Assembly (NCBI GenBank): GCA_977030845.1
Contig: OZ365111.1
Location: 48,980,001 to 49,044,000 of the forward strand
Source of the DNA: Fimbriosthenelais zetlandica
Lineage: Eukaryota
DNA length: 64,000 bases
Reading direction: 5' to 3'
Translations under genes and position numbers: made by a program
Notes under the pieces: model-generated
What the model saw: the letters and a program-made list of their open reading frames with translations, nothing else
Databases searched by the model: none
Told to the model about the DNA's origin: nothing
Shown here: positions 4,301-42,448 of the stretch, one piece after another
Layout of the letters: each line of letters begins with the position of its first letter
How positions within the stretch are numbered: the stretch's first letter is position 1

Positions 4301-6061
4301 CTTCTTCAATTTGGTGATTGACATAAAGTGTGGATTAGTGGGGCATTGTACAACAATGCTTTAGTCTATGGTTGTACATGTACAATGGAAGACATTCAGC
4401 AAGATCATCAGCTGTATACCTATGCATATGATCCACAGACTTGAGTAACTGATGCATCAGGGATCTGACCTTTCTCTCTGGCAGATATCGACGCCTTCCT
4501 ATAGAAATAATAGTCACTATAGGTTGTTACAAGTTCATGCAGGAGAAGGGAATCCTCAAGCTCACCAAACTCTCATGAAGTTATGCTTTCCTTTGAGTTC
4601 CTTTGAGACATTGTTAGTAATAGGATAGTAAACTCTTTAATAATTAATTGTCCTATATATGAGGGCCAATTAGGGGGTCTCTTGTAATAATTTATCAATT
4701 GTAGGTCAAGAAATTATTATTAATTTTAGTCATTTTGCGTCTAATTCCAACCTGCTTGGTCTAAACATGTTATGAGTTCTGCTTTTGGTCACAAATCTGG
4801 CTTAATCCCTGCATGGTGCCTCTGGTCGGGATTAACAGATTAGTACCAGTGTCTAATCCACCGTATCAATGATGCATGACTTCTATATAATACAGCATAT
4901 ACCAGCAATAAACTTAATGAACAACATACCAGTTACCATTAAAATCCCCAGACTAGTCAGTCTTAGGTTTATATAAAAATTCTATAAAGTATTTACACCA
5001 TATCACATGGACGCACATATGTGTGTTTTCCGTCGGGCCGCGATTTTTTTTATGTATTTAAAAAAAATACATTTAAAAAAATTTTCATTGGCTTTTGTAT
5101 GAAAAAACGCTTTGGTGTCTGCATCATAGGATCAACATTTAAGGGTGTGCGGAGCGAAATACGAAGAAACACACTGAGGTATTCCTTCGTATTTACATAC
5201 ATATATACCTTTTCCAATATCAGAAATGAAATAAAATTGAAGAAACGACGTATTGAAGTAAGCACCCACCTCTGATCATCTCATAGATGTTCATGTCCAT
5301 CAGCTCACATATCAGAACCAGAGTCCCACTCTTCTTATCACTAAAAGAGGGCAGAAATAAAGTGATATATCAATAAATTCAGTTTGATTTATGATCTAGC
5401 GAAGTCATTGGATCATTTCTATTACGCAGTTACATCTGTCGCTAAAATGAAAGTTTAATAAAGGAATTTAAACAGTTATCTTTGGGCTCCATGCACCTAG
5501 AACCAAAGTGACGGGGTGAAACGTGTTTTCGTTTCGTTTTTCGTCATCTTTGATTAAGTGGGTAGGAATGGGCCATCATGGGATATATTCATTTTATTTG
5601 TTCATAACTTACAACATGACCTCGTGCAGCTCCAGGATATTGTCATGAGGACTGAGCCGTCGTAGAGCCTGTATTTCCCTGAGATGATTCACCTGTTCAA
5701 CACTGCAAAAATAAACATCGGTCAGAGTTGATCAGCAGAACCGAGATGACGTCACTTCCTGGCGCGCCATTTTTTTTTTTAAACATGGCGGCCATGAGGT
5801 CAAAGTTCATGACCGTAGTTTCAATGCTAAATATGTCCTATACTGACATCGCTGTCCCTGATATTAACTCTCTATCACCAATTGATACTCTGAGCCCCCT
5901 GCTATGAAGAATAATGAAGAATATAATGAAGAATGAAGAGTGTCACCTGTCATAGTGTTGTTTCATCTTTTTACAGGCCCAGAAGCTGCCATCTTTAAGG
6001 TTTTGACATTTGAGTACTTCCGAAAAAGTACCTTCACCCTTTTTGCCCAGCACCCGGTATT
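1337..6061 (-). CDS. MOK: MAPK/MAK/MRK overlapping kinase (MOK-like), partial. Exons: 5947-6061, 5613-5702, 5270-5340, 4420-4498, 3506-3554, 3311-3396, 3133-3225, 2646-2748, 1337-1513. The start exon and 3' exons are unresolved.
   Basis: Nine GT-AG exons splice in frame: [18 protein letters not shown]...ACKKMK...[13 protein letters not shown]...[11 protein letters not shown]...[32 protein letters not shown]...[11 protein letters not shown]...[10 protein letters not shown]...[18 protein letters not shown]. The TEY activation loop and [13 protein letters not shown] are characteristic of MOK. Confidence 0.93.
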
Positions 6062-6179
6062 CTGCCAAGAAAGAATGATAATCAATGTGAGAATTATAGT
6101 GGACACAGCAGGCATCTAAGACAAAAGTCTTTAAAAAATTTAATTAAACAGCAGAAAAATACATATTAACCAAATTGAT

Positions 6180-7940
6180 ATCATAGCTAGGCCTTTATTG
6201 GAATCTGCCTAATTTAGTTTATTCAGTCTGCTTCTGGGTATAGTTTTTTCCATTCGAAAGTGCAAACTGTTCAAAAGGTATTCAGGTTGTTAAGCAATAT
6301 TCGAAACCAAGTTTTTATTTTCAAACAGGGATTTTTTGTGACCCACAAACTGAATGTAATCATGGAGATGTAACAGTAGGAAGAGAGAGGGGCTTGATTC
6401 ATGGGAAATATTTACATTTTCCGTAGCGTATATGAAACAAGCCCCAGATGATTCATGGAAAGAGGAAGAAGAATGTTTAAAATGGTATTCAGGTATGTTA
6501 AAAAAGTAGGGTTGCTTCAACAAAAGTTATTAAGTGAAGTGCCATGATCACAAGATGACCGAAAACGGCATTCTAAACATTCTTTTGAATTGTATCACAC
6601 AAATTCACAGTATATATATAATTCACTGTTCACCTATTCAGTAAACGTGAGTTAGTGAAGGCCAAATAATTATAATAGGTTCTGATTTACTTAAAATAAT
6701 TTCAACTGGAAAGGGAAGTTAGAAAAGGGAAATAATATCTCAAGTATCCACACACATGAACTACACCTACTTCCCCTCAGCATTAAATAATCGTCCAAAT
6801 GCACCATGGTTACTGGTAATATGGAGCAGAAACTGAAAAAAGCCATCTCGATTTTACATAATATATCTACATTTCTGGACGATAATTGATATAGAATTCA
6901 ATGAACCCATGTTTTAATATCGTGATCTGTTCATAAAACTGGAAGATTTACTTCGATCAATGACTATAAAAGCTGAAGCAAGTGTAATTGGAGGTGTGAT
7001 TCTTTTTAATTTGGTTGAATAAGGTGAGAAGAAAAGTCCCCGGGCTTTATCGATGGGGAATCCCAACACAATTTCAATAGCTTTCTCACTTTAACCTGGG
7101 GAAGCTATCGCTGGAATAAGTTCCATGCACAATTGGATGCCAAGTTGAAATTTCACCCTAAATTGATGCGTGGAATATTTTCAGTCTTTTAAAGGCAAAT
7201 TATGATGTAAACATAATGAATGATCGTGAACTGTAGTGCAGGTGTGAACCAGCTATAATGTTGGCAGCCATCTGGATCCAATAATCCTGTTCGCCATACA
7301 TTGATACACTACATGAGTTGAAGAATTGAATGAGGAATGAGGATAACTCAGCATGGGGTCATATGATCTGGTATATTATGTAATCTCATTGTGGCTATCT
7401 CAGTATAATAGCAGGATACATACTTCGTGAACTGATTAATGAAGTTTCAAATTTAGTCAGTTTTCTTAACTCTACATTTTCTTAACTCTAAACATGTGAT
7501 AAATCGGTATCTTCGTGTTGAGTAGCAATATTAATAATATAAGATAATGAACAGATAAAAGAATTGATGAATCACGAATGAATGAGTGAACGATTCAATG
7601 CATGAATGAATGCTTTCAGGAATGAATGATATAAAAAATTAATCACATAGAATAGTTACTCACTATTCATTATGTACGTTGAACTGCCCGTGATAAAATT
7701 GGAGTTAATTGGTTCCGGCATTTTGAAATAAGTCCAAGTATAATTCCTAAAATGTTCCTAATGTAAAAGCACAATCAACTTCTCCCTGTGGTATCAACCT
7801 CACTTAAAACAGGTTTCTCCGCGGGTCAAAGACGAGTTCACAGGGATAAATACTGGATAAATATTCAGATATAACATCACAAACTCATTTTGTCCTTTGG
7901 TAACATTTGAGCATTAACATTATACCACACATATTCCAGC
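6180..7940 (-). mobile_element. Highly decayed non-LTR retrotransposon (CR1/L2/Jockey-like ORF2) remnant upstream of MOK exon 5947-6061
   Basis: Broken minus-strand frames give motifs in the order expected for ORF2: WNMCG (~7925-7938, APE start), LG*NFNL (GDFN-like, ~7140-7165), KTWV (PW-like), LNNF, KIPV*K (IPVFKKG-like, ~6315-6335) and MEKTIPRSRL (MEKIV..RL-like, ~6225-6255). There are many stops and frameshifts. Confidence 0.5.
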
Positions 7941-9067
7941 ACCATATTTTGGAGGACCATGTTGAATTGTCCCTATGAATTCTCCTTATCATAATCCATA
8001 TTGATTAATGTATAAGTCCGTATGTCTATCCTTTGTAAGCCAGTGATTAAACAAGTGTCCTCAAGACATCAAGAAAGGCATTTTTTTTTATAAAAGGTCC
8101 TCATGATTATAATCAAAACTAAAGGTTCTTCAACCGTTCTCAAGTTATTTCTCTCCTTGTTTTATATAGAGCGTTCAGGCGATAGTTGCTCTTTTATTTA
8201 TTATTTCCCTTTAAGTTTCCAGGCAGTTGAATGTGCTCTATTGAAGTGGTACAGTGGAGACCGGTGTGTGTAGGTGTGTAGGTGGGTGAGTGTGTATATG
8301 GAATTATGCCTGGTAGTCAGCTTTCCCGGTTAAGTCATGGATTTGGGCTCAATCCAAAGTCTACAAGCATGCTTGTTCCAACATGGACTTGTGACCATGC
8401 CCCGAACTGGCTTACCGTTAACATGTATACATATATGAAGTCAACCAGTGTTTGATTGGTGTGAATGCCGCACTCATGCTCACATGCCAATTAAGGTGTA
8501 ACGTTAGGAGGTGCAGAATCAGAATTATGTTAATTAAGTCATTTTCAAAACACATTTCGTCGCTCATGATTCGTCATTAAAACAGGTGCAGATCGAGGAA
8601 TTTGTTGTTGGTTGGGATCCACGGCTTAAGACCTCTGAAAGCATAGAACTGTTACGTAGAGTAGAGTGCTCTGTAAAGTTCTATGCTAAGGGTGGTAGGG
8701 CCCTAGCCTAGTAGGGGTTGGGGAGTGGCGGGGGGGGGGGGAGGTCCTGGCCTCCTTGATCCACCGATCAATGTAAAAATATAATTAATTTAATATGAGT
8801 TGATTAATATGAGTTGATTAATTTCATATTAATATCCAATACCATAGGAGTCGTGCAGTAAGATCGCATGTGTAAATATTCGCACACCTACTAAAAGTAT
8901 ACATCGTTTCCCATGCATACCCATTAATGGAAAACGTCCAAACTTTTCCCACCATCTAGGTGGATGGTCGAAATACATGCTGGGACGCTACCTGGTGAAT
9001 ATATTCTGACAATGGCACAGTAAGTTCCATTTCCGAGAGCCCAATGCAATATATCGCATAGACAAGA

Positions 9068-9168
9068 CATGGGCGGATACGGGGATTTGGAAAAGGAAGG
9101 CCCAGCCATGGGTCCAAACAAAATCATCTCCAAAAGGAAGGGGTTCTCACCCTCTTTGATCCGCCCTG
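9068..9168. repeat. Short MITE-like element with GGGCGGAT...ATCCGCCC termini
   Basis: The left end catgggcggatac and right end gatccgccctg are inverted. Degenerate relatives lie near 8590-8770 and 22033-22200. Confidence 0.5.
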
Positions 9169-10886
9169 CAAGACAAATACTCGCGATTTTAGTTTAGAAG
9201 TACTTAGTGCAGTAACTGTCACCTATACAAATATGAAATACATATAGATTCCCCACTATAGGTCCAAACTCGGACAATTTCCAAAAAATAATTAACTGAG
9301 ATTTAAGAAGAGAAAGCTTTTCTAACAAGAAGAGACAAACTTAAAATCGCAAGAATAAAAGGGAAAAACGACACCTGACACGACGGAAAGGTGCCTGTGA
9401 AATCGATTTCTGGACTTTTCACCGAAACTTGGGTCTCATAAAGCAAAGGACTCCTTCTTTAGTTTCGCCGCATCCTAACAATTATTGTGGTCGATGGATC
9501 TATACGCGCAGAACTAAAAAGTGTCAGCAAATGGCGATCCTTTGATTAGAGATAAAACTTGAGCAAGTTTCATAAAGAAGCAAAAGATGAATGAACTCTG
9601 GCTTCTTTGTTATATTTTGATTTCATACATTAGATTTGGATTTGAAAGGACCTTGTTTCATACTGGCATTCGGAACAATGACAAACTGAATCTGAGGTCC
9701 TAATGGAAAATAGGTGAACTTTTTATCGTATAAGAGAGGACCGTTTCATGGATGATGGTTTCGGGATGAAACGGGCCCAGGGGCCTGTCTCGGAAGATTG
9801 ATGCCTTTTCTTTGGTTATAGACTTCTAAAGCTCTAAATGCAAAGATATGGACAGGTTTGAGAGATTTGTACCTAGAAATCTATAGGCATATGGAAACGA
9901 AAGATGATGATATCGATTTCAGTTCCACTTTCTCAGCATCAGTAGCTTAACACTGAAAACAACTTTTATATTATTTTCAAGCAAGATAATCGAAAACATT
10001 ACTTATCATTATGATATAATGATTAATTTATATCGAGAAATTTAAAAATATGAAAAATAAAGGGTGTGGGCATCATCATCGTCTCCTTAATGGAAGCCAC
10101 CACCTCGCAAAATCAACAATGGAATCAAGGGATAAGGCTTCCGTTGTCATAGTAACGGAGGTACATCTCTCATGACCACTCCTGAGAAAGGACGTATTTC
10201 TCACGTTCCGTTGATCCTCATCCATATAATATGTTGTTCTGTATGCCCAGGTATACAAACCGACATACTGATATCATCAATTCTTGTGCTGCAATTCCTT
10301 TAATCACCAATAGCATCTGTACCATCTTCTATCTGGATGCCTCACTTTTGTATTATAATATGGAATGAAAACAGGGTCATTATATAACTCTTATAATTCT
10401 CCTATCACGCATCACTTTGTTTAAACGGCCACTTGACCGTCGATCCAAAGTGAGCTCAAGTAACAATTAAAAAGCTGGATTTTGAAAAAAAAGTCGATGT
10501 AAAAGACAGAATCCAGATCTCCAATATAACTTGTGCATTGGAATGAATTGCATTGTCACATCATTAGCATAATTTATGCAGGCCTCTCCTATTGGCTGTA
10601 CCTATATACATGCACAGAGCGACACCTAGCAGCTTTGATCACCAGCATTTATAAGACATCATGCTTGGTACACATGGTCTTTTCACCCACACATTCTGTA
10701 CACAATCAGGGGCATTTTTAGAGCCACCGATCTTAGAAAGCCAATCTGTCGAGATTCAACTGGGAAGCATTGTGAAAATCTCCAATATCATTGGCTAAAC
10801 AACCTTATAATTGAAGGGACCAATATTTTAAGCAATGTGGGTTGTAAGAACATGACCATTTCTTTTCCATTTGGAATTTGAAAGGG

Positions 10887-30119: not shown

Positions 30120-32706
30120 TTAAGAAACATCATCAGAAGAAACGTACAAATTATTCTCGACTAAAATATTTAAATCTCTATTCCTTTTAATAGGTTGGCT
30201 GTATGCAATATCTTCCCTTGGAGTAGCCCACTTATCAGACTGATCATTATTGCTATCAATGTAACCTCTGTCATCTGACATATACTTAGCATTGGACCCT
30301 TGAGTTGTCCTGGTTAGACTTATATCAGGAATGTTGTTTGCCCTGTCTATGGTTGCATATCTATTTGAAGTGCTGTCCGTCTCATCCTTGTCTTCCTTTT
30401 CTCCAGTGCTTCGACAAGATCCCTCAGTGCATGGCTTTTTGATGTAACCTCTGTTGGAAAAAAATGAAAAGGTTAATAGCCTAATGTCAATCTAAAGTAG
30501 GGGGAATTTCCAATTGCACATAAAGGTCAGGACATTTGAAATCCTTGTTAAACTGAATCTGTCACCTTCGCACGATTCCCTCCCCGACCCTCCACTCGCC
30601 ACCTGTCGCACTTTCATTCACCAAGCATGCATCGAACCTTCCTGGTTGCATTTTATCGTTGACCTTACCTTTTAACTAAGAAAAGGATGACTAAGGCTAC
30701 CACCAATGCCAAAATTCCAATGACAACGCTTGCAGCAATGATACCACCTGAAATTAGACATTGTTGTAATAACATCTGGGGCCTGTTTCAAAAGGATTTT
30801 GAAACAGGCTCCTGAGGCCCATTTCAAAAGGGAAATTAGCAATGCTAAGTCTATAGCTTTTGTTTTGAAACAGGCTCCTGATTTAACTGGTATAACTTGC
30901 AGAACATAATTAGTACAAAACCGTTTCTATATGAGATTTTTACCTATGGATTTCTGACTTGCAGTTTCGGTTTGTTGCACATCCGTTTCATTTCGATCAG
31001 GGATAGTTGTCAATGTTGGTAGTTTATCATCGGTGGTGATGGTATCTGTGGTGGTTGTGGTGGTTGTGGGTATAACCATATCTACACTTTGGGTTGAAGT
31101 TGAACTCTGTAAACAGTTGTAGGCAGCACCTCCAATGTCAGCTGTCAAGTTCTTCCTTCTCCAACAATCACGATGTTCCCACGTTGAAAAATCTGCCGGA
31201 TTCTGATTTTGCTGAAAGACTAAAAACATACTGTTATCTTCATATAATCATCTAATTATCCTTACAATCCAAAGGCTAATGCTTCAGAAACAACGCGTTA
31301 TATATTAGACTGCAAAAGGGGGTTCAAATTGATTGATTTTGTTCGGTGGATTAATAAAGATACGACCAATTCAAACTCACCTTCATATCCAATCAATAAC
31401 TGTGTTTCTTCGCTTCCACTGATTAATCTTAACTCAAACTTATCATGTTGACGGTAATTCGAATCCCCCTCTAGGGTAGTTCCATCTCTCGTTTGGAACA
31501 TGCCATTTGCCACCCAAAATACCTTTAGATAAATACTGCCTTGACCTCCGTCAATAGTAATTGAACAAGCCTGATTCCCACATGAAACTTCCATCTGGTT
31601 GAACAGGTGACATGATGTAATATAACCGCATGGTTTTTCTTTAACATCAATATATTTTTCCCATACTGGAGCAGCTAGTGGACAAATGCTTTGAACTTGA
31701 TGCCCTAGAAACATTGAAACCAACAAGATTTTGAATGGCTTATTTTTGCTCATTTTTGCTTTGAAAGCGACACAAGGATTCTCATAATCCTAGTTCAGTC
31801 GGGTAGGGTATCTTACCAGCATTCAATTTTACTTATTGATCCAAACAGAATAAATTATTTTCTTACTTTCTATGCAACGATGTGAGTTCAAGAAGTCTGC
31901 TTTCTGCCGACCCTCTAACTGTACATTGGACCAATGTAGAATTTGGCGGTTTTTTCCGACATAGTTGTATATCAGAGAGACGAAGGGAACCCCTGTACCT
32001 TCACCGGAAGTTGATGGAGCAAGAACTTGATCATCAGGACAAGCTAAGTTAAAGGCATCATCGGGATCATTTTGAAAGCCTGCATGCAAGGATTTAGGAA
32101 AACATATACCGATATATACCGATAACAAGAGGTATAGACTGTCGACTGAAACAGTGACATCGAAAACAATAGGAGCCTGGACCTTCTCTTGCTTTGAATG
32201 GAAAGATGGTGCCAAACGCTCTGGACCTATAATTTTGTCACAAAAGGTATAGTTCTTCCCATTTTGCGGATCACCCGTGGACTGTTAATACCATGATTTC
32301 AATATAGGTGGCCCTTCGATCATTACGTGTCGAAATTTCCGGATATATCTTAACAGTTTTGTCTGATAGGCATGCAATTCGTTTCTTTTAAAATTATTAA
32401 CATTTATCATATAACATACTTATGGTTGTTTATAATTTTAATCTCTATGAATAAATCGCATAAATTGCCTTGAATTTGAGTTGGTCCCATATGCTATATC
32501 AGAGAACGAACATAGTATGTAATTTAAAGTGTTGTCCTCTTTGTGCAGGGTCAACATTTTCGGAAAGTCAGTTTCAGGAATGAACAAAATGTAGTTCTAT
32601 ATAATATCAAATACTTACACACACTGCTGCAGTGTATCTCAGTCGAGAGAAGGAACAATGCTGCCAATGAGAGGAGAATGCATGTATTCCTTGTTGATCT
32701 GCTCAT
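30120..32706 (-). CDS. Orphan type I receptor, tandem paralog A. Exons: 32619-32706 (signal peptide), 31867-32079, 31381-31704 (CUB-like), 30944-31219 (Thr-rich stalk), 30669-30747 (TM), 30120-30450 (tail)
   Basis: MSRSTRNTCILLSLAALFLLSTE; CPDDQVLAP...RCI; CSITIDGGQG...LLIGYEG; TM GIIAASVVIGILALVVALVILFLV; tail with RYATI, IAYSQP and LVENNLY. All splice junctions are in phase. Confidence 0.85.
30778..30878. repeat. Small hairpin MITE family (TIR GGGGCCTGTTTCAAAA...TTTTGAAACAGGC(C/T)CC), two adjacent copies here
   Basis: Related copies occur at ~2057-2200, ~14360-14410, ~37765-37860, ~47548-47715, ~49953-50030 and ~52045-52093. Confidence 0.75.
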
Positions 32707-33621
32707 GACTATATCACTAATCCTTGCACTTCATTGAAAACATTAAATTATATTGAAATTATTCTTACTTTTGTCGTTTTTATTCCTTCGTTCACGCACT
32801 AAATCACAAGAATATCACAACTCCGACCGGGAAAACCCAGGACCTTACACCAAACTGAACGGTAGACCTATATTGTGTCATGAATGATGTACACGTTTAA
32901 GAATTTTCTACCTGGAACACCTTTAGTCGTGCACTGCCTCAAATTCCCTAAACTATCACTTGGCATGCAGGAAACAAAAGCAAGCTCTTAATTATTCTAT
33001 GAACAAAAAATCGATTATTTTAATGATCAATGCCAGCAAAGTCATTTTAAACAATTCAAAAAATATATAATGAATATAGTAGCAATCATTTACAATGATC
33101 TTCCCACTATATGGCCTATTTCCAAATCTTTTTTCACATGGTATTATCCAAGACTGATCTGTCCTGTCCATTTTCACATAAAACAGAAATAATTTATCAT
33201 AATATGTACAGCAAGAATTCACACAAATGAAATACCTTCAAGGACAATAGGAGATATTGAACAGGCATGACGTCATTATACATGTTAAATGAAGACCTTT
33301 TTGGAGACCGTTTATAAGGCCAGATCCTTTTGAGGATAAATAGACAAAATTTACCGAGGGTGTGGCAAAATATTCGGGCCTCTCCACCCCTGTGGTTCTT
33401 TTTATATTCGTTTCACCTCTAATAAATAATTTAAAATCACATTTACTAGACTGCAAAATATTGCTCGCAGGCAATATACACTATAGACCAAGGTCAATAT
33501 TTCTATCATATTTCTGCCTTGACATAGTCTAATGATGCATTCTACTCCAACAAAATGATTTCATCACGAAGGGCACATGTTACGTTACGGGACAGATTAT
33601 TCAAACTATTAATGGTCCTTG

Positions 33622-36600
33622 TTATACTTCCACCGAGCCTGGCCTTTCAATATGCTCTTTAAGTGAACCTTCTACAGAGTCCATTTCGTGATCGTCTGAC
33701 ACTTCGGAGTCTGACATTGAGTCTGACATTGAGTCTGACCCTGACAGTTCCATATCATCCATTAAAGAGTCTGGCAATTCCATATCATCTTCAAAAGTAC
33801 CTGACATTTCCTTATCTTCATCTACAGTGTCCAGTCTTCCGACGCTCCCGTTACTGTATGCTCCATTAATATGTTTATTGTATTTGAAACCTGTAGGTTT
33901 AATGATGTGTTTTAAGTCATCCATTTTGATTGCAGTAACTCCTTCCTGAGTGGCAGGCTCACTTGATATATCTGACTCTGCATCAGTTTCTTTACCCTTA
34001 CACTCACAACATCTCTCAACGCAACAGTTTTCGATGTAGCCTCTGAAGAAAGAAATTCATCCGAAATTATAAGCAAATATTTATGAAACGGCTCTTTGAA
34101 CATCAAAAAGATCTTTAGGAAAGGGAAATATATTATTAATATTCGTTTTGAAAGAGGCTCATTGAATTATATAAAAAATAACTAGGCATTGCTGGCCTTT
34201 ATATATTCAATATTTGACGCAATATTAATTGGAAATTTACCTTTTAACGAGGAATATTACTATCAACAGGATTGATAGAATTCCAATGGTGAGAGCTGCA
34301 GCTAGGATGCTCGTTGCTGAAATGGGAATCAACAATCATTATGTTGCCTCTTAATTTACTTCCCTTATTACTTACCTCCTAATTTACTTCCCTATAATAC
34401 TAATGTATCGCTTTGTGATATTCATATTAGTTATATTAGCATTATGGGTAAACTTATAATGTGAGTAACTACAGCATTCTGTACTTCAACACAAATTACT
34501 AGGATTATGGATTACGTGGATCCAGGATATTTCAGGGGACGTTGCTACAGAAAAGGGCACAGTTGTATTTAAATACTGAATAAAATTATCCAAAATTAAT
34601 CATTTACTTCCTGCTCCTTTGCTTGAGGATTCCGGACTGGCTGTTGTCTTGCGTTCTCTGGGAGTACCTGAAGACCTGCCGTCTCCATCATTTGCTAGGC
34701 TTGTCTGTTTAGCTGGAGTTGTGCTTGATGAACACTGATAAGCAGCACTTCCCAGGTCACTATATTTTCTTTTTCTTTCCCAACAGTATCTGTAGTCCCA
34801 CTCCTCGATTTTAATTGCACCTGTGCCTATTTGAAAAACTGAAGAAATAGCAAATATAATTATGTATTGGGTAAGAAATTATGTAACTAGTACGGTACAG
34901 GGTATTGTACAAGTGTTGACAGCCCCAAAACGGGAGTGTTGGCAGCATTCTGATTTCACTGCATGACCAAATATATGCTCACCTTCATATCCTAACAACA
35001 AATGGGCCTTCCCGTGGTCTGAAGCGAAATATATTGTCATTTCTTCGTGGGCACTGAAATCATCAGTTATATTGAGTGTTTTGTTTGAATGATGACCGTC
35101 ATTAACTATCAAATTGCCATCTTTAGCCCAAATGACATGGATGTAAACTGCCATCCCAAAACCTGCGTCAAGAGTTACAGAGCAGGCTGATCCAGCACAA
35201 CTGAAATCTTGTGATTCTAGTTGACATGCTCCGATATAACCACATGGTTGGCGATCTACACGAAGGCGTCCAAATGTAGGATGATCTCCAGGGCAAAGCA
35301 TATGTACTTGTTTTTCTGGAAGGTTATCAATAAAACAAAATTTAGTATAAAGGTCATGTTACCTTTGCTTCAAAGGATCCCACGTTTCAAATTCGAAGGA
35401 ATTTACATATGAATGGAAATCCATGGAATTTCATGTCGAAAAAACTAATTAACCTACATGGCCCTTGACCATGACCGAGGCCATTGTATTTTGATTCTAA
35501 AACCTGAGGCCCTCGGCCAATAATGTATATCGTCCTTTGTATTGTTGCTCTAGTACTATGTATACAGTTGTGAATTTTTATAGTTTGGTGTTCTCGTATA
35601 TACTTTACCTAATCAATGTTCGTGTCATATGTAATGTATTTCACTTACTTTTAATGCAACGATATAAGCTGGCGAAGTCATCTGTTGTTATATCATCATA
35701 TATTTTGTTCTTATGGATAACATTATCTTGCAGTCCTAAATGATCATATATCAATTCAGGGGGAAGTTTAATCTGGGATTCTATCTCAGTTGGTGCGAGA
35801 ACTTCGTCGCTTGGACATTTCAACATCAGCTGTTCTCCATCTAAATCCCCTGCAGGTTGATCTATCCTCTCCCAGCCTGTAGTAAAGTCAGAAGTTGGAA
35901 GTGATTCTTAGCTATAAAGATTAACTATAAACGCTTATAAATTAGCTATAAATTTCCAACAATTCCAATTGAACTCAATTATAGAACTGGCAGAATTACT
36001 TTATTTTCTTTGTTCTTACTATTCAGCACCTTTGTATTAATAGAACATTAAAAAGAAAACAGATCCTGAAAATAACACGACTCTTTGGCTGGCAGAAATA
36101 TCATGGTACTCCTACCTTTGAGCAGGCACATTGGTATAATTAATTGTAAGACCTGCAATTCAACATTTTTAGCTGAATTGTCAAAGAGATGACACCTTAT
36201 TATGGTTTACCATGCAGGGCATGCCCTTTCAAACTCCACCCTTGTTGCACCATAAATTATTATATTATACATGTGTACACCTAAAGTAAGCGTTTACACC
36301 GGTATCCTGAATATAGTCACCAAAGCCCTCACGATTATATAGTGCTCGTGTCATTGTTCAAGTGGGATATGCACATGGTACTTGCATATATTTTGGAAAG
36401 TAAAGGATAGATTATAAATGGATACAGGTTTATCTTCAATCTGGTAGATGTATACCAATTAAATAGACACATAAATATCATGTAATCGCCATGTAATTGA
36501 CTCAATTTTTAAACGAATTTTAGGAAGGAATTCAGATAATACTACACATGTATAATGTTTTAAGTGAATATTTGTTTATACTTACATGCAGGGGTGGCAT

Positions 36601-36667
36601 CCACAACTGTTGCCATGATAAAAATCATAATGATTATCACCTCCATAATGATGCTGGTACGTACCAT
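33622..36667 (-). CDS. Orphan type I receptor, tandem paralog B. Exons: 36586-36667, 35649-35876, 34983-35315, 34608-34838, 34241-34316, 33622-34042
   Basis: MVRTSIIMEVIIIMIFIMATVVDA; CPSDEVLAP...RCI; CSVTLDAGFG...IYFASD...LLLGYEG; YCWERK...LGSAAYQC; TM SILAAALTIGILSILLIVIFLV; juxtamembrane CCVERCCEC; acidic Ser/Asp/Met-rich tail. Confidence 0.85.
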
Positions 36668-36753
36668 CTCCAAAGTCCTAATTTTCTATTTTCAGCCGAG
36701 TGGTTTTGTCAATATATAATGAGAGAGTGGGGAACGTTTGGGGTGTCTATCCA

Positions 36754-36763
36754 CTTTATATAG
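36754..36763 (-). promoter_or_regulatory. Candidate TATA box of receptor paralog B
   Basis: CTATATAAAG on the minus strand lies ~90 bp upstream of the ATG at 36667. A TGACGTCA lies further upstream at ~36971. Confidence 0.45.
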
Positions 36764-38503
36764 GGACTTCATGGGACCAAGTCCTTTAGTCGGCACGGTC
36801 TAAAGCCCATATGGGTCATTTGTATGGATGATAGGAATATAAGAAATGTTCATATCCAGCATGAATATCTTTTACATACTTACATGTTATTTTTGAGTCG
36901 TGGGGTAAATGTCAAATGATTGGTATCCTCTGTAATAAAGCCATTGAATTTAAATGTGAAAAGTTGAAAATGACGTCATTGCTCATGATCAGCTTAAAAA
37001 GTTGAGGTCAAATGGCTTGTCCGTGAAATTGCTGGGGAGCATACAAAAAGCACGATTTTCGGGGGACTGTTTACTTGTATATTATACAATGAGATTCTGT
37101 TTTTACATGACTGCAAGTCTGATTCAGTGGGTTGGCTCTAATTGTTATTGTAGCTCTCTGAGGGCCTTTATTCCCATTACACTATTATACTGTGGTGACA
37201 TATTTTCATCAGGCTGTTCATTCATCCCACACAGAAGTAAAGGAGTACATGTATGGGTGACTTTATATATACTGACTACATCGAGCACTGGCCAGGTCAA
37301 AATGCCGTCACGCTGAATCATTATCGTTAAACCAAACCTGTCATTACTTCCTGTTTGGCACGATTTTCTATCCCGGAACACCAATAATGTTTTAAAATTT
37401 ACTGACGTTGTTCTTCCTCTTTAAATAAAGGAATTTTAAGTGATTAAGATTTAAAGAATTTAGTTCAGAACAGAAATTTCTTTTGTGTTGGGACATCAAG
37501 CATTTAGCTTTCCCCGCTGTCACAGTTGACAGGGCCGCAATTAAGCAATTGACAAAAGGACAGCTTTTCAAATCAATTAAAATCTTTATTGGCATAAGGT
37601 AAATAAATCATTTCTGAAATATAATTATTACGCGGTACCATATATTTGTCCTAACTAAATTATAAATACTTCCTTTTATAACTATATAATGACTAATGAG
37701 ATTCTAATATCCTCTTTGACCTTCTTCCTGTAGGACCCACCTATATAACGTGCTAGCTTTGACTTCGGGGCTATTTCTATTCATATAGGGTACTGTTTCA
37801 AATGTATTTCTAGGAATGCTAAACATATATGGCTATATTTTCGTTTTGAAACAGGCCCCGGGAGTTGTGAAGGCAAGTTGAACACAATGTAACGTTAGTA
37901 ATTATCATCTCCTCCTAGAACAAGTCCTAACTTATTTAGGTCACCTTCTAGGCCCTAACACCTCATTGTAAGGCAATTGTAAGATCTGCCAGATCCAAAA
38001 TCGTATGCGACACCAAGAAAAAAATGTTTGCACAACACCTGTCATGAGGCGGTGTCCGTGTTGTCCTTTTTTAAAATAACTGGGGGTCAGGAGGGTGCAG
38101 AAGAAAAAAGAAACAAAAAATGTTCAGCTAGATAATAACAATGCAGCCACCTGCAGGCGAATTGGAACTACTTAATGACCTAGATATACAAATTGTTGTC
38201 GAGTTACTTTTTGAGTTACTTTTTGAAGATTGTTGTACAACGGTGCCACCCTTTTATACTGACTGAACGGTATGTTTGTAATTTTATATATTCCTAGACA
38301 CGGAAAACCCATTCATTTTAACATTGACTACAAACTGGCTACACATAAAGCGTATAATTATATATAAATACTGCTTCACTACTTAAATACTGCCCACTTC
38401 ATATTAAGAAACCAAAAAAAATGGAGCTGGGCCCCTTTCCAGAGGAATCAGGATGTGTTGCACAATGACTATAGGAACTTTATGAAAAGTTTAGCTAACT
38501 TTG

Positions 38504-41500
38504 TCATGTCCTTGGAGGTGGTGGGGGTACCTCTTCATATTCCCCATACAATTCATTATCAACTAATGACAGCTCATTATCAAGAACCTTATGTGACGTT
38601 TTCCTTGTTTTATCAACCATGGCGTATTCCACGTCAGCGTTGTCCTCCTGCCCTTCACTTCTCATGCTGTCACGCCATGAAGGGATGTGATTGTCTTTAC
38701 TGATGACACTGTGTCTAATGCCGTCATCAATTGTGACAGGATGATCTCCATTGGCTTCACTTGACAATGGATTGTTATAGTAAATGTTAGATGGTTGTTG
38801 ATGATTGTAATATGTTGCAGTGTTTTTGGATGATCCGCTGTTATAGTAAGTATTCTCTTCTGCTTTTGATTTGACTGAAGAAGGTAAGTGATAAGAGTAA
38901 GGTACATCTCTTCTCAGATCAGCATCATTCTCACTCGCAGCATTAGAGTAATGGTCCTCGTCTTCTATCGATCTCCCATATTTCTTGGTTTTGCCCTTAT
39001 CTCTCCGAGATTTCCTTTAAAATAAAATTTAAAAAATCAGAATCTCTCTCCTATGTTGTTTTACATAATATGCTAAATAAATGTCAACTCGAGTGGAAAA
39101 CAAAAAAAGAAGAAGGTTCATCCTATCTATGAAGACTGGTCAGATTACCTTGAGAAATGGATGCAGGCTCCTATGAGGAATATTGCAGCAATGATGAACA
39201 GGCCACCTAGGACACCACCAATGATGTAAAACCGATCTGCAATGATTTATGGCACGTTGGTTTGCGTTATATAAGAACTATGCAATTAACACATAATGGA
39301 CAAGACAGCATCTTCAATCCACGCCCTTCTATTAATACGTAAGTGATCTGGAGCTTGCTTCAAAACAACGATTAAGTCTATGGCATTTTTGTCCGCTGAA
39401 ACAGGCCCCGGAAATCCTATAATAATAAAAAAATCTGGAGAACTGGAATTTTGGTAATATCTCGAGTAAGGAGGTAAGATGTTGAAACATATACTAATCA
39501 GTCTACTAATAACTGACCAATTAAGTAATGTGGGTACTATCCTAAATACCCTACAAATATGTCCCACCATTATTCCCCAAACCAATTATATATCAGCTTA
39601 TAGGCTGTATACCTCACAGGCCTACATCAAGCAGGTCATCTATCTACATTTAGTAGGCCTATCTATAAATTATCTTCTGAATTAGCCGGCTGGGGCCTGT
39701 TTCAGAATGATTACTAGTTAAGTCTAACAAATTACATAGTTTCATTGTGTAAGCTTTGCTCCAAAAGCCCAAATTCATCTCTTTTATGAAAATTAATTTA
39801 ATTTAAAATGTAATTTAAAACAGACTCTGATCGTAGCGATTTTTCCTGAAAATTGGTGCAGTATGGATCGATATACAGGAGGCTAGGGTATACGATTATA
39901 TTTTAATCAAATTGGTCAAAGGATTCCATAAGTAATTACCATTTAAACCAAGCTTAACTTCTGAAGCAGTAGTTGAAGGCGACATCTCAGTGGAGCCTGT
40001 TGATTCAGGAAATGTTGCTGCAGGAATTACAGTGCTGGTAGATGAACCAGAAGGTACTAGTACTGTGGTTGTTGATACAGATGTGGTTGACGACTGTTGA
40101 GTTGTGCGCGGATGACCTGTCATACTTGTCCGTCTTATTGTACTACCAGCAGGCGGTTGTGTAGCAAATGGATTTGTAGTTGTTATAGATAGACCCCTTG
40201 TACTTTGGGATTGTCTCTTCCTACGGGAATGTTTTCTATTGACTGCATTTGACCGAGTACCGAGATTCATTGCGTTCCTTGATTGGCATTCTTTATCCAG
40301 CCAATTTTCAATTATGGGCAGAACAGCAGTTGATGAATAAACTGGAAAAGTAAAATATGCCACAAAACTTTTTGAAGATCATATTTTAATGTCAACCGAA
40401 TTGCTATGATGAATTTCAAGAGGCATTCAGCTAGGCTTCTGTTTTTAGGGCTGCGATGACTTTTGGGGATTGGCATGCATTTTTAGTAGTAATTATATTA
40501 TTAATTATAATTATTGTTAATTAATTATATCTTCTTACTTTCATATCGAATGATAAACTGGAGTTCCCGGCTCACGGGAGGATACATAATGGTGACATTT
40601 TGATGAAACTTCTGAGGAAAACTTGAGATGATTTGATGTTCATCGTCTCTTCCCTCTTTAGAGTTGGCATGGAAAATAAGCATTTGGGTGTAAATGATGC
40701 TGGCTGGTCCCCCATCTATCGTCATTCTACAGGGTCCAGAGGGACAAGGTGCACTTGCCAAGGACTTATTATTACAGGGGAGTATATAACCAGACGTTGG
40801 TTTACTAAAATAAAGATGACTTGTTGGTGTTTCTGTGCTAGGGCAATACCGGAAGAGCTGATGTTCTAAGAGAGAAAGAGATGTATAGCATATTAATAAG
40901 ATAGGTACAAAGAAAGCAATGAACCCTATAACCTACACATAGGATGAGCCGAAAAGATATTTGAATATCATATTATAAAAGAGTATTCAGGTGTGTATGG
41001 ACAACAATACATTCCCTATAGTAGACGAGTCTGATAGCCCAATACATTCCCTATAGTAGACGAGTCCGATAGCCCAATACATTAATTCCCTATAGTAGAC
41101 GTGTCTGATAGCCCAATACTTCCCCTATAATAGACGAGTCTGGTATAACAATAAATTCCCAATACATTCCCTATAATATAGTAGACGAGTCTGATATATC
41201 AATAATTTCTCAGATGGCCGATGAAAGATCTTGGTGCATGTAAGGCAACCAATGTCAAAAAGCATGATGCATGTAATGAATTAAAAAATAGCCATGAGCT
41301 GAAGCTCTGTCATCTTGCTGTCAACACATATGATCTGAGAATTTGAACTCACTTTGAATACATTGATGAACGTTGATGAAGGTCTGCAGGGTGATATTGC
41401 CAGGAATGTTATCTTGGTAGATTATCACCTTGTTCTTGCCAATATAGTCCTGGAGTAAATAAGGACGTGTGCCAGAGCTAGATCTACATATTAAAGGTGC

Positions 41501-42448
41501 CAAAACCCAGGACGGCGGACAAAATACTGTATAAACTCCTCTCTCCAACTCCTGCAAATCTGAAAATAAGATACGTAATGTTAATACATCTACTGAATGT
41601 TGTGTCCATCAGAGATATATATGCCCATAATATTAGTCACATCAAGAAGGGCGTTGTCAAATTGAAGGCCATACATGCAGTAGTTAAACAAAATAATTGC
41701 CATTCATGCATTCTTGTTATTTATCTATATTATAGTTAGACTCTGTATGATTATTAGACGCTGTATGATTAATAGACTGTATGATTAATAGATTCTGTAT
41801 GATTAATAGACTGGCTATAATTAATTAAACTCAAGTGCAAAGGTAGGCTTTGATTGCAGATCTTATTGGCTATTATATGACAGACAAAAATACTTTATCC
41901 CAATCCACAGGCAGAAAGCATGACGGGCCCATTTCAGAAGAAAGATGCCGTATACATTTATTAAAATATACAGACTTATACCACTGATCAATGTAGCGCT
42001 TCTATATTATGAAACAACCCCTATTGGGGAACGTTTATAATCATTCCGAGGACACTGTACTATGCCCTATATTTACCCACTGAAATGTTGAATATTGTTC
42101 TATATATGGGACAATTATAAATGTGGTATTTCAAGGGGGATAAAAAACAAATAGGCAAGTAGGTGTGAAGTGAGGGAGGGTAAATCCCTGTAAAAAAAAA
42201 ACACAGTAAGAAGGAAAGAAAAAGGTGCAAAACAATGAATGGAATGACCACAGGTGTGTATATATTATAGGGGAGGTTTTGTGTGTTATATCCTCCTTGA
42301 AAGAAGATCGAATAAAGGTAAGGTACTTACATACGGATCCGGTGTTGGATCCAGGTAGGAGCATAATCATGACTATGGATACGAATAACGCATAATTATT
42401 GTGAAATGTTCTTATTGTTTTCACAGTATGCACGAGAAGTGTATCCAT
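38504..42448 (-). CDS. Orphan type I receptor, tandem paralog C (more divergent). Exons: 42331-42448, 41353-41559, 40539-40865, 39940-40341, 39149-39236, 38504-39014
   Basis: Hydrophobic leader ALFVSIVMIMLLPG; CPPSWVLAP...QCI; CRMTIDGG...FIIRYE; RRKR plus a long S/T stalk; TM FYIIGGVLGGLFIIAAIFLIGAC; Tyr-rich tail ending VEYAMV...VDNELYGEYEEVPPPPPRT. Confidence 0.83.
41006..41195. repeat. Minisatellite, ~35-bp unit x ~5, intronic
   Basis: AATACATTCCCTATAGTAGACGAGTCTGATAGCCC is repeated head-to-tail with indels. Confidence 0.9.
41738..41822. repeat. Short tandem repeat, ~16-18-bp unit x ~5, intronic
   Basis: (T)AGACTCTGTATGATTA(A)T variants occur in tandem. Confidence 0.8.

What the first reader, a model, noticed from the sequence alone, without database searches (positions are those of the whole stretch)
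30120..39014. Paired-receptor logic: homologous ectodomains carry three very different signalling tails
Seen: the paralog C tail (38504-39014) has an ITIM-consensus VEYAMV, several YxN sites (HYSN, TYYN twice, IYYNN), YEEV, VDNELY and a terminal PPPPPR. The paralog A tail (30120-30450) has YATI, IAYSQP and VENNLY. The paralog B tail (33622-34042) has no YxxL/I/V motif, but has a juxtamembrane CCVERCCEC and an acidic Ser/Asp/Met repeat. Established: (I/V/L/S)xYxx(L/V) recruits SHP phosphatases, YxN binds the Grb2 SH2 domain, PxxPxR binds SH3 domains, and juxtamembrane Cys clusters are often palmitoylated. Inference: these are inhibitory, adaptor and decoy members of one paired-receptor system.
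Basis: partly seen in the sequence, partly recalled or inferred. Interest (0 to 1): 0.72.

Follow-up and report, generated by a model that had tools for sequence, protein, structure and literature searches.

The report
Three receptor paralogs, one ancestral tail
Three neighbouring genes of an invertebrate (probably worm) genome encode related cell-surface proteins whose tails descend from one ancestral tyrosine-motif tail that two genes keep and one has lost, so they are an orphan receptor family, not a "paired receptor" system as immunologists define it.

Summary
A (30120-32706), B (33622-36667) and C (38504-42448) are intact six-exon minus-strand genes for type I membrane proteins.

The tails are not three unrelated designs. 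The genome holds at least 14 loci of this family. Nine of 12 readable tails carry the same two-part module: Y-A-x-[V/I]-D (ITIM/EPIYA-like) followed by a C-terminal hydrophobic-x-N-x-x-Y (NxxY, PTB type). A profile built only from out-of-window paralogs ranks the C tail (E 7.5e-5) and the A tail (E 1.3e-3) first among 2155 window ORFs. B is not hit.

B is A's closest relative and its tail aligns with A's over 56 residues. Where A has RYATID, B has EPATQE. B has also gained extra juxtamembrane Cys and an acidic Ser repeat that is partly a young 12-bp tandem repeat.

Counted in single tails, only the YxN array of C exceeds chance.

The paired-receptor criteria fail. Ectodomains are 22-36% identical, no transmembrane core has a charged residue, and no tail is short.

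The second ectodomain exon models as a CUB-like sandwich. No homolog outside this genome and no RNA run could be found.

I read this as a new variant of tyrosine-motif receptors. The docking function is inferred, not shown. This scan also noted the same stretch separately; that follow-up is withheld.

The parts
30120..32706 (-). Gene A, 437 aa. Exons: 32706-32619 (signal peptide), 32079-31867 (N-domain, d1), 31704-31381 (CUB-like domain, d2), 31219-30944 (Cys pair plus Thr-rich stalk), 30747-30669 (TM), 30450-30120 (tail).
   Evidence: all introns GT-AG, ectodomain exons phase 1-1, TM exon ends in phase 2; paralogy.
30345..30362 (-). A tail RYATID, a Y-A-x-[I/V]-D site. Asn at -2, so it does not match strict ITIM.
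30141..30164 (-). A tail LVENNLYV, the C-terminal hydrophobic-x-N-x-x-Y site.
   Evidence: domain E 0.031 against a profile built from out-of-window paralogs..
30189..30209 (-). A tail IAYSQPI (YxxP), placed opposite C's IYYNNPL in a low-confidence MAFFT alignment of the tails.
   Evidence: BLASTP of the A and C tails did not pair these stretches.
33622..36667 (-). Gene B, 457 aa. Exons: 36667-36586, 35876-35649, 35315-34983, 34838-34608, 34316-34241, 34042-33622.
34000..34026 (-). B juxtamembrane CCVERCCEC. A has PCTEGSC at the homologous place.
   Evidence: A-B tails E 0.002 over 56 aa..
33943..33960 (-). B EPATQE, the position that aligns with A's RYATID. The tyrosine has been replaced.
33691..33789 (-). 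B acidic Ser/Asp/Met stretch. It includes a perfect 12-bp x 2.8 tandem repeat at 33707-33739.
38504..42448 (-). Gene C, 551 aa. Exons: 42448-42331, 41559-41353, 40865-40539, 40341-39940, 39236-39149, 39014-38504.
38543..38632 (-). C two-part module: VEYAMVDK (38609-38632, matches the ITIM consensus), a basic spacer, then LVDNELYG (38543-38566).
   Evidence: alignment with D, G and I. E 7.5e-5; genome-wide, only family tails hit.
38765..38953 (-). C YxN array: HYSN, TYYNS, TYYNH, IYYNNPL.
   Evidence: 5 observed, 1.06 expected, P=0.001; not a recent DNA tandem repeat.
38507..38542 (-). C terminus EYEEV-PPPPPRT (one YxxV and one PxxPxR). Unique to C within the family.

Best explanation
A, B and C are old tandem paralogs of a lineage-restricted family of type I membrane proteins, with at least 14 loci in this genome. 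Each protein has a signal peptide, a small Cys-containing N-domain, a CUB-like beta-sandwich, a Cys pair plus a Thr/Ser-rich stalk, a TM span and a disordered tail. The three tails descend from one ancestral tail with a two-part tyrosine module. The first part is Y-A-x-[V/I]-D, of the ITIM / SHP2-Csk 'EPIYA' type, which SH2 domains read. The second part, at the C-terminus, is hydrophobic-V-[E/D]-N-x-x-Y, an NxxY site whose conserved residues lie N-terminal of the Tyr, as in PTB-domain ligands.

C keeps the compact module. It has added three YYN units (Grb2-type YxN) and a PPPPPR end. A keeps both halves, about 65 residues apart. B is sister to A. It keeps the juxtamembrane GYI..C..C segment, has replaced both tyrosines, and has gained extra Cys and an acidic Ser-rich repeat.

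Inferred mechanism: ligand-driven clustering lets a Src-type kinase phosphorylate the module. SH2 proteins (an SHP-type phosphatase is encoded in the genome) and PTB proteins (a Shc-like gene is present) then dock. C can additionally recruit a Grb2/Drk-like adaptor. B cannot be read this way, so it is either silent or routed differently.

Shown: gene structure, paralogy, module conservation, and loss in B. Inferred: phosphorylation, the binding partners, and any sign (inhibitory or activating).
For: Gene models are. There are 13 genome-wide hits to the second ectodomain exon, plus one further member, L.

Module alignment of C, D, G and I has 8 invariant positions (Y, A, V, D, K, V, N, Y) inside tails that otherwise do not align. 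A genome-wide six-frame search with that profile hits only family tails, and it found a new member at E 0.004. An HMM built from D, G, I and L alone ranks the C tail (7.5e-5) and the A tail (1.3e-3) first and second of 2155 window ORFs; B is absent.

In the motif table, hydrophobic-x-N-x-x-Y is present in 9 of 12 tails, always near the C-terminus and always downstream of a Y-x-x-[L/I/V] site. The tails of H, J and K1 (HHYMTL...DPYENDHYF) align at DNA level with the ends of the G tail, so they are diverged copies of the module.

In the tree, A, A', B and C form one clade (85/87), and module bearers sit on every main branch, which places the module in the ancestor. The A and B tails give E 0.002, with YATID aligned to PATQE.

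Readers are encoded in the genome. There are at least 50 SH2 and at least 13 PID exon hits. One locus has tandem SH2 followed by PTP on one strand at C25:35.050-35.054 Mb. Another has PID followed by SH2 at C1:27.19 Mb.

For the second ectodomain exon the AF2 model has pLDDT 74.7. CUB domains fill the top ranks in Foldseek against PDB and AFDB and in VIA-align (Z 8.7, 8.2, 8.0).
Against: No RNA or DNA run could be listed, so neither expression nor the splice models are confirmed. No ortholog was found in any collection, so conservation rests on within-genome paralogs only. The pairwise A-C tail similarity is not significant (E 0.16 and 0.23). A's YATID lies N-terminal of the other shared sites, whereas in C, D, G, I and L it lies just before the NxxY, so A's copy may descend from a different repeat unit. 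Strict ITIM (a hydrophobic residue or Ser at -2) holds in C, G and I but not in A, D or L. The NxxY site lacks the Pro of classical NPxY. The CUB assignment rests on one good model out of five and on borderline scores; Pfam CUB does not hit.
Confidence: 0.55

Rival explanations
1. C (ITIM) is inhibitory, A is an adaptor-type or activating member, and B is a decoy. All three belong to one paired-receptor system that senses a common ligand.
For: The three genes sit in tandem within 12.3 kb. C matches the ITIM consensus. B lacks tyrosine motifs. Elsewhere in the family, ectodomain cassettes do recombine with different tails: J has I-like d1-d2 exons and an H-like tail.
Against: Ectodomains are only 22-36% identical, against the 'very similar' ectodomains that define paired receptors (PMC3533184). 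No member has a short tail or an Arg/Lys in the TM core. A carries the homolog of C's 'inhibitory' site together with the same NxxY site, so A and C do not differ in kind. B has a TM span and a 140-aa tail, so it is not a soluble or tail-less decoy.
Confidence: 0.07
2. The conserved Tyr sites are trafficking signals, not phosphotyrosine docking sites. YxxV/I would be an AP-2 mu2 signal, and hydrophobic-x-N-x-x-Y an NPxY-like endocytic signal read by Dab2, ARH or Numb-type PTB domains. On this view the family are endocytic or scavenger receptors, and B, with its acidic Ser clusters and Cys, is sorted differently.
For: Both halves of the module fit the endocytic consensus as well as they fit the signalling one. 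PMC8007030 notes that NPxY motifs are mostly known for trafficking. CUB-like ectodomains and mucin stalks occur in endocytic receptors such as cubilin, which appears among the fold hits.
Against: The invariant Ala at +1 and Asp at +4 (YAxVD), and the frequent Val or Ile at -2, are not needed for AP-2 binding. They do recall SH2 ligands of SHP2 and Csk (my own knowledge; PMC6952403, for the SHP2 consensus match of EPIYA sites). Tyr-rich arrays such as YYN x3 in C, YLNSN x3 in F and the four ITIM matches in I point to multivalent pTyr docking. The two roles do not exclude each other.
Confidence: 0.25
3. The motif matches are chance features of disordered, fast-evolving tails. The genes may be unexpressed or decaying, and the tails have no specific function.
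For: Single-tail shuffles put the ITIM and YxxL/I/V counts at chance. No RNA run was listed. A' carries a frameshifting 32-bp insertion in its tail exon. Part of B's acidic stretch is a perfect 12-bp repeat of the slippage type.
Against: A, B and C have intact ORFs with canonical splice sites and conserved phases. Eight module positions are invariant in paralogs whose ectodomains are only 20-35% identical. The profile E-values are significant. dN/dS is below 1 in the recent G/K pairs (0.29-0.56); for the I/J pair it is 0.74-0.76 on 4-8 substitutions, which does not separate it from neutrality.
Confidence: 0.08

Closest known systems
Vertebrate paired immune receptors (KIR, LILR, PILR, SIRP, CD300A/C; review PMC3533184)
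   Same: Small tandem gene cluster. One member (C) has an ITIM-consensus site. The family shows copy-number change and exchange of ectodomain and tail cassettes (I/J/H).
   Different: Ectodomains of A, B and C are 22-36% identical, not near-identical. There is no short-tailed member with a charged TM residue. The ectodomain is CUB-like, not Ig or C-type lectin. A and C share the same tail module instead of opposing ones.
CD200R1 tail motif EEDExxPYxxYxxKxNxxY (PMC8007030)
   Same: Upstream tyrosines, a basic residue, then a C-terminal NxxY whose Pro is dispensable. That paper shows the extended motif is needed for inhibition. From my own knowledge, CD200R has no ITIM and signals through a PTB adaptor.
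   Different: No sequence homology. Here the upstream site is YAxVD, the spacer is longer (about 10-18 residues), and the ectodomain is unrelated (Ig in CD200R). No function has been tested.
ITIM / EPIYA-type SH2 sites (for example the PD-1, LAIR-1 and PZR ITIMs; the bacterial CagA EPIYA-C/D site read by SHP2 and Csk; PMC6952403)
   Same: A Y-A-x-[I/V/L]-D core, with Val or Ile at -2 in C, G and I. A's Y-A-T-I-D is, by my recollection, the same five residues as the CagA site.
   Different: The -2 position is not conserved in A, D or L. No binding data exist. The resemblance to individual vertebrate sequences is recalled from memory, not tested here.
CUB-domain single-pass scaffold receptors with tyrosine tails (CDCP1, DCBLD1/2, neuropilins; own knowledge)
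   Same: A CUB-like extracellular sandwich, one TM span and a disordered tail with several docking tyrosines. A and C each have a YxxP site, the motif type used by DCBLD2.
   Different: Pfam CUB and the CDCP1 CUB models do not hit. The Cys pattern differs. There is an extra N-domain and a mucin stalk. The tails have no sequence relation.
NPxY plus YxxL receptors (CED-1/Draper/MEGF10) and the APP YENPTY site (own knowledge)
   Same: One SH2-type site combined with one PTB-type site in a single short tail. The Y-E-N-D-H-Y of paralogs H, J and K1 resembles Y-E-N-P-T-Y.
   Different: The order of the sites is reversed relative to CED-1. There is no Pro. The ectodomain has no EGF repeats.

Membership tests
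Paired activating/inhibitory receptors (definition in PMC3533184) | Very similar extracellular regions between the members | tested here: not met
   Second ectodomain exon: A-B 36%, A-C 28%, B-C about 22%. First: 28-29%.
Paired activating/inhibitory receptors | Inhibitory member carries an ITIM in its tail | tested here: met
   C has VEYAMV. The same site is VEYATV in G and VEYAVV in I. This is a sequence match only.
Paired activating/inhibitory receptors | Activating member has a short tail and an Arg/Lys in the TM span to bind an ITAM adaptor | tested here: not met
   Tails are 110, 140 and 170 aa. The TM cores of A, B and C have no charged residue.
Paired activating/inhibitory receptors | Genes lie in a small cluster | tested here: met
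   Three genes on one strand within 30120-42448.
Paired activating/inhibitory receptors | Shared ligand and overlapping expression | not testable with these tools
   No RNA run was listed. There are no ligand data.
ITIM-bearing inhibitory receptors | [S/I/V/L]xYxx[I/V/L] in the cytoplasmic tail | tested here: inconclusive
   Met in C, not in A (NRYATI), none in B. Within C alone the match is at chance (P=0.36). The site is conserved in paralogs.
ITIM-bearing inhibitory receptors | Tyr phosphorylation and recruitment of SHP-1, SHP-2 or SHIP | not testable with these tools
   Only shown: an SHP-type locus (tandem SH2 then PTP) exists at C25:35.050-35.054 Mb.
PTB-ligand tails (NPxY / NxxY) | Hydrophobic residue at -5, Asn at -3, Tyr at 0 | tested here: met
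   A VENNLY and C VDNELY. Present in 9 of 12 family tails. NXXY is treated as the PTB core motif in PMC4985636.
PTB-ligand tails (NPxY / NxxY) | Pro at -2 (classical NPxY) | tested here: not met
   The -2 residue is N, E or D in all members.
CUB domain (Pfam PF00431) | Sequence match to the family model | tested here: not met
   No Pfam hit to CUB at E<=1. The profile against PDB sequences was blank at E<=10.
CUB domain (Pfam PF00431) | CUB beta-sandwich fold | tested here: inconclusive
   AF2 pLDDT 74.7 and pTM 0.65 in one of five models. CUB domains dominate the top hits: Foldseek TM 0.55-0.62 at E about 1e-3, VIA-align Z 8.7-7.5. The language-model look-up also leans to CUB, at 0.81-0.86.
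Grb2-binding adaptor tails (YxN arrays; Pfam GAPT) | Multiple YxN sites; match to the GAPT model | tested here: inconclusive
   C has 5 YxN (P=0.001), A has 0, B has 1. GAPT gives E 0.064 and 13.5 bits, below the 21.1-bit cut-off.

The most novel reading that the evidence does not exclude
The family is a non-Ig, CUB-based invertebrate counterpart of the vertebrate multigene immune-receptor clusters. Its ectodomains would diversify quickly, and cassettes would be exchanged between genes with different tails. All members would signal through a previously undescribed two-part inhibitory module, YAxVD...VENxxY, read jointly by an SHP/Csk-type SH2 protein and a Dok/Shc-type PTB protein. Tyrosine-dead members such as B would act as modulators. 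Pointers: H versus I in the second ectodomain exon gives dN/dS of about 2, and J combines an I-like ectodomain with an H-like tail.
Probability: 0.15. Interest if true: 0.7.

Novelty: new variant of a known kind. Interest (0 to 1): 0.4.

Why it matters
Tyrosine-motif receptors outside vertebrates are poorly charted. Single ITIM or YxN matches in disordered tails are usually uninterpretable, because they occur by chance. Here a family of at least 14 members supplies an internal conservation test. That test separates real sites (YAxVD and hydrophobic-VENxxY) from incidental ones. It also shows a natural tyrosine-loss variant, B, next to its motif-bearing sister, A. This gives a concrete peptide pair to test against the animal's own SH2 and PTB domains. 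It also gives a worked example of why 'paired receptor' should not be inferred from different tails alone. If the module proves to be an inhibitory or docking unit, it would extend the known forms of ITIM/NPxY-type signalling to a CUB-like orphan family.

Tried and rejected
- **Pfam on every exon piece:** nothing above threshold.
- **Homologs outside this genome:** an exhaustive HMMER search of 1.84 billion representatives with a profile of the second ectodomain exon (d2) gave 0 hits at E<=1e-3. Paralogs in this genome scoring only 30-36 bits would also fail that threshold. Three word-seeded searches gave nothing at E<=1: the A' d2 ORF, the 11-sequence d2 alignment, and the I tail ORF. Each sees only proteins 0.55-1.75 times the query length, so full-length proteins above about 395 aa were out of reach.
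- **Sequencing runs:** none was listed for C or A, RNA or any kind (two further tries were unanswered). Read laying was therefore not used, and expression and splicing are unverified.
- **First d2 fold, with 5 sequences:** pLDDT 42, unusable.
- **Tail classes:** I first thought G/K1 and I/J were near-identical ectodomains with unrelated tails. blastn showed that the H, J and K1 tail type is a diverged form of the same module, so I dropped the claim of two unrelated tail classes.
- **Alternative tail exons:** the module HMM hits only the two annotated tail exons in the window, and the TM-to-tail introns are only 134-218 bp. No alternative tail exons were found.


Full report
**1. What is there**

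The window is AT-rich animal DNA (GC about 0.37). Between 30120 and 42448 the minus strand carries three genes, which I spliced by hand and checked by script. They are A (437 aa), B (457 aa) and C (551 aa).

Each gene has six exons:
- a signal peptide exon;
- a roughly 70-aa Cys-containing N-domain, called d1 below;
- a roughly 108-aa Cys-rich domain, called d2 below;
- a stalk with W..C...C followed by a Thr/Ser-rich stretch;
- a TM exon;
- one tail exon.

All introns are GT-AG. The ectodomain exons are phase 1-1 and the TM exon ends in phase 2 in all three genes. tblastn inside the window confirms that the ectodomains are paralogous. For d2, A-B is 35% identical (E 1e-19), A-C 28% (1e-5) and B-C 22% (2e-4). 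The tails give no BLAST match to each other. Pfam finds nothing.

**2. The observation**

Composition-preserving shuffles of each tail show that most single matches are what chance gives. The ITIM pattern in C has P=0.36 and YxxL/I/V has P about 0.5. Only the five YxN sites of C (1.06 expected, P=0.001) and the PxxPxR end (P=0.04) are enriched. C is also Tyr-rich, with 13 Tyr in its 170-aa tail (7.6%).

Motif counting alone therefore cannot carry the interpretation. I looked for conservation instead.

**3. The family**

A d2 profile searched over the window's own 447-Mb genome found 13 exon matches:
- the trio A, B, C;
- a recent partial copy, A' with a B' fragment, 1.8 Mb away;
- a pair, D and E, at C11:12.31 Mb;
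- F at 5.29 Mb;
- G, H and I at 27.40-27.42 Mb;
- J at 50.81 Mb;
- K1 and K2 on contig C10.

A tail-module profile then revealed one more member, L, next to F. All members have the same exon plan.

No relative outside this genome was found. The exhaustive profile search gave 0 hits at E<=1e-3, and three word-seeded searches were blank. These blanks are limited by database content and by the length window of the word-seeded tool. No sequencing run could be listed, so expression is untested. Earlier notes of this scan call the organism 'probably a marine worm'. I did not test that.

**4. The tails are homologous**

Reading the paralog tails showed a recurring C-terminal module:
- C: DVEYAMVDKTRKTSHKVLDNELSLVDNELYGEY
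- D: DAYATVDKTKKKHRGSELYIVENNYYVSANNI*
- G: QVEYATVDLNKKRRQSGLFIVENDQYVNN
- I: QVEYAVVDPAKKRKNQPGIFIVENDQYGT
- L: DVYAVVDKRLRQSGAGVTLVENEQYD

Aligned, eight positions are invariant (Y, A, V, D, K, V, N, Y), although the rest of the tails cannot be aligned. A six-frame search of the whole genome with this 36-position profile hits only tails of this family.

As an independent test, I built an HMM from D, G, I and L only, with none from the window. I searched it against all 2155 stop-to-stop ORFs of the window. The two best hits were the C tail (E 7.5e-5, full module) and the A tail (E 1.3e-3; LVENNLYVSSDDV plus a weak RYATIDRA). B was not hit.

In the motif table, hydrophobic-x-N-x-x-Y occurs near the C-terminus of 9 of 12 tails: A, C, D, G, H, I, J, K1 and L. 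In each it lies downstream of a Y-x-x-[L/I/V] site. It is absent from B, E and F. The shorter tails of H, J and K1 (HHYMTL...DPYENDHYF) at first looked like a second class. However, the ends of the K1 tail exon align at DNA level with the ends of the G tail exon. That places YENDHY opposite VENDQY, so these are diverged copies of the same module.

On a d1+d2 tree, A, A', B and C form one clade (85/87), and module bearers sit on every major branch. The simplest reading is that the module is ancestral. The long branches make the deep order unsure.

**5. What happened in A, B and C**

C keeps the compact module at 38543-38632. It adds three YYN units and a terminal EYEEVPPPPPRT. Neither addition is found in any paralog.

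A keeps both halves, RYATID at 30345-30362 and LVENNLYV at 30141-30164, but about 65 residues apart. Paralog I carries four extra copies of the YA-type unit (IQYATLDLD, TQYATIEID, VLYANVDV), so this unit duplicates easily. A's copy may descend from such a repeat. In a low-confidence MAFFT alignment of the tails, A and C also line up at K/Y-Y-[M/N]-S and at I-x-Y-x-x-P-[I/L]. Their pairwise BLASTP similarity is not significant (E 0.16 and 0.23) and does not reproduce those two pairings.

B's tail is significantly similar to A's over the first 56 residues (E 0.002). GYIENCCVERCCECKGKETDAESDISSEPATQEG in B aligns with GYIKKPCTEGSCRSTGEKEDKDETDSTSNRYATIDR in A. The Cys cluster is therefore an amplified family trait; A has two of these Cys and E has CGC. 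The tyrosine of YATID is replaced in B, which reads PATQE. At the C-terminus the multiple alignment places SVEGSLK opposite LVENNLY (low confidence).

Part of B's acidic Ser/Asp/Met stretch is a perfect 12-bp x 2.8 tandem repeat (33707-33739). That is a young slippage product and not necessarily a selected motif.

**6. Paired-receptor test**

PMC3533184 defines paired receptors by three features: very similar ectodomains; an ITIM in the inhibitory member; and a short tail plus a TM Arg/Lys in the activating member. Here the ectodomains are 22-36% identical, all tails are 110-170 aa, and no TM core has a charge. Only the clustering and the ITIM match in C are met.

A and C share the same two sites, so 'inhibitory versus adaptor' is not a distinction the sequences support.

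**7. Likely mechanism (inferred)**

In the first site the conserved residues lie C-terminal of the Tyr (A at +1, V/I at +3, D at +4). SH2 domains read ligands in this way. From my own knowledge, it fits the SHP2 N-SH2 and Csk preference seen in many ITIMs and in the EPIYA sites. PMC6952403 states that the EPIYA-D flank matches the SHP2 consensus.

In the second site the conserved residues lie N-terminal of the Tyr (hydrophobic at -5, N at -3), and the +1 to +3 positions vary. PTB domains read NPxY and NxxY ligands in this way (PMC4985636).

A functional analogue is the CD200R motif EEDExxPYxxYxxKxNxxY, in which the Pro is dispensable (PMC8007030).

The genome encodes the readers:
- at least 50 SH2 exon hits and at least 13 PID hits;
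- an SHP-type arrangement, with two SH2 domains then PTP on one strand, at C25:35.050-35.054 Mb;
- a Shc-like arrangement, PID then SH2, at C1:27.19 Mb.

The main rival is that both sites serve endocytosis, through AP-2 and Dab2/Numb-type PTB domains. The sequence cannot separate these two readings.

**8. The ectodomain**

With an 11-sequence alignment, d2 gave one confident AF2 model (pLDDT 74.7, pTM 0.65). The other four models were poor. CUB domains take most of the top ranks in three searches:
- Foldseek against PDB: neuropilin, PCPE-1, C1r, MASP and spermadhesin, TM 0.55-0.58, E about 2e-3;
- the AFDB clusters search;
- the Foldseek-independent VIA-align scan: Z 8.7, 8.2 and 8.0.

A language-model look-up leans the same way, weakly. 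Pfam CUB and a profile search of PDB sequences do not hit. I call d2 CUB-like and tentative. The fold of d1 is unknown.

**9. Verdict**

The thing itself is an orphan, lineage-restricted family of CUB-like single-pass receptors with a conserved two-part Tyr module. It is a new variant of a known kind, of moderate interest.

This scan also noted the same stretch as a 'tandem cluster of three orphan single-pass receptors' (s1-228812).

Noticed in passing
L007 (G000:C11:50844000-50853999), about 3440-9450, minus strand: A recent partial segmental copy of the 3' part of B (TM and tail, 88-100% aa identity, ending at the duplication edge) plus the whole of A (second ectodomain exon 97% aa identity). 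The tail exon of A' has a 32-bp insertion after ...NTIPD. This shifts the frame and stops translation just after the YATID site, so A' is either truncated or a pseudogene.
   Followed up: partly
L014 (C11:27.42 Mb, gene I), L015 (C11:50.809 Mb, gene J), L013/L014 (gene H): Mosaic paralogs. J's first-exon, intron and second-exon ectodomain block is 96% identical at DNA level to I's. J's tail exon is 96% identical to H's. The stalk of I is closest to H (88%). This suggests gene conversion or recombination that swaps ectodomain and tail cassettes. I carries a 200-aa tail with four ITIM matches and one ITSM match, plus the family module.
   Followed up: partly
L013:8828-9133 versus L014:2924-3226: The second ectodomain exons of H and I differ by 36.2 nonsynonymous and 4.8 synonymous changes (Nei-Gojobori dN/dS about 2.0 over 101 codons). 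This hints at diversifying selection on the CUB-like domain. The sample is small and no formal test was run.
   Followed up: no
window 40214-40225, minus strand: The stalk of C contains RRKR (HSRRKR|QS), a furin-type dibasic site. A and B lack it. C might be shed or processed.
   Followed up: no
window 33707-33739: A perfect 12-bp x 2.8 tandem repeat encodes the SDSM units of B's acidic tail. The B' copy differs there (SDPM).
   Followed up: partly
window 32619/32079 (A), 36586/35876 (B), 42331/41559 (C), and the PCGY sites in exon 3: Two Cys residues are both present in A and B and both absent in C (C has Tyr and PTSGY instead). One is created at the junction of the signal-peptide exon and the next exon. 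The other is the Cys of PCGY. They may form a disulfide linking the two ectodomain exons.
   Followed up: no
L011:5537-6043 (gene F tail): Three tandem units, D[N/D]Y[L/M]NSN, form a second YxN array that arose independently of the YYN units in C.
   Followed up: no
window about 30780-30900 and 39400-39720: Short inverted-repeat elements of MITE type (…GGAGCCTGTTTCAAAA…TTTGAAACAGGCCCC…) recur in introns of A and C.
   Followed up: no
L009, about 639-1763 (C11:12.3126-12.3138 Mb), plus strand: An intronless 375-aa ORF with the look of a rhodopsin-class GPCR (DRY-like IDRY, NPxxY-like NPFIY) lies just downstream of family member E.
   Followed up: no
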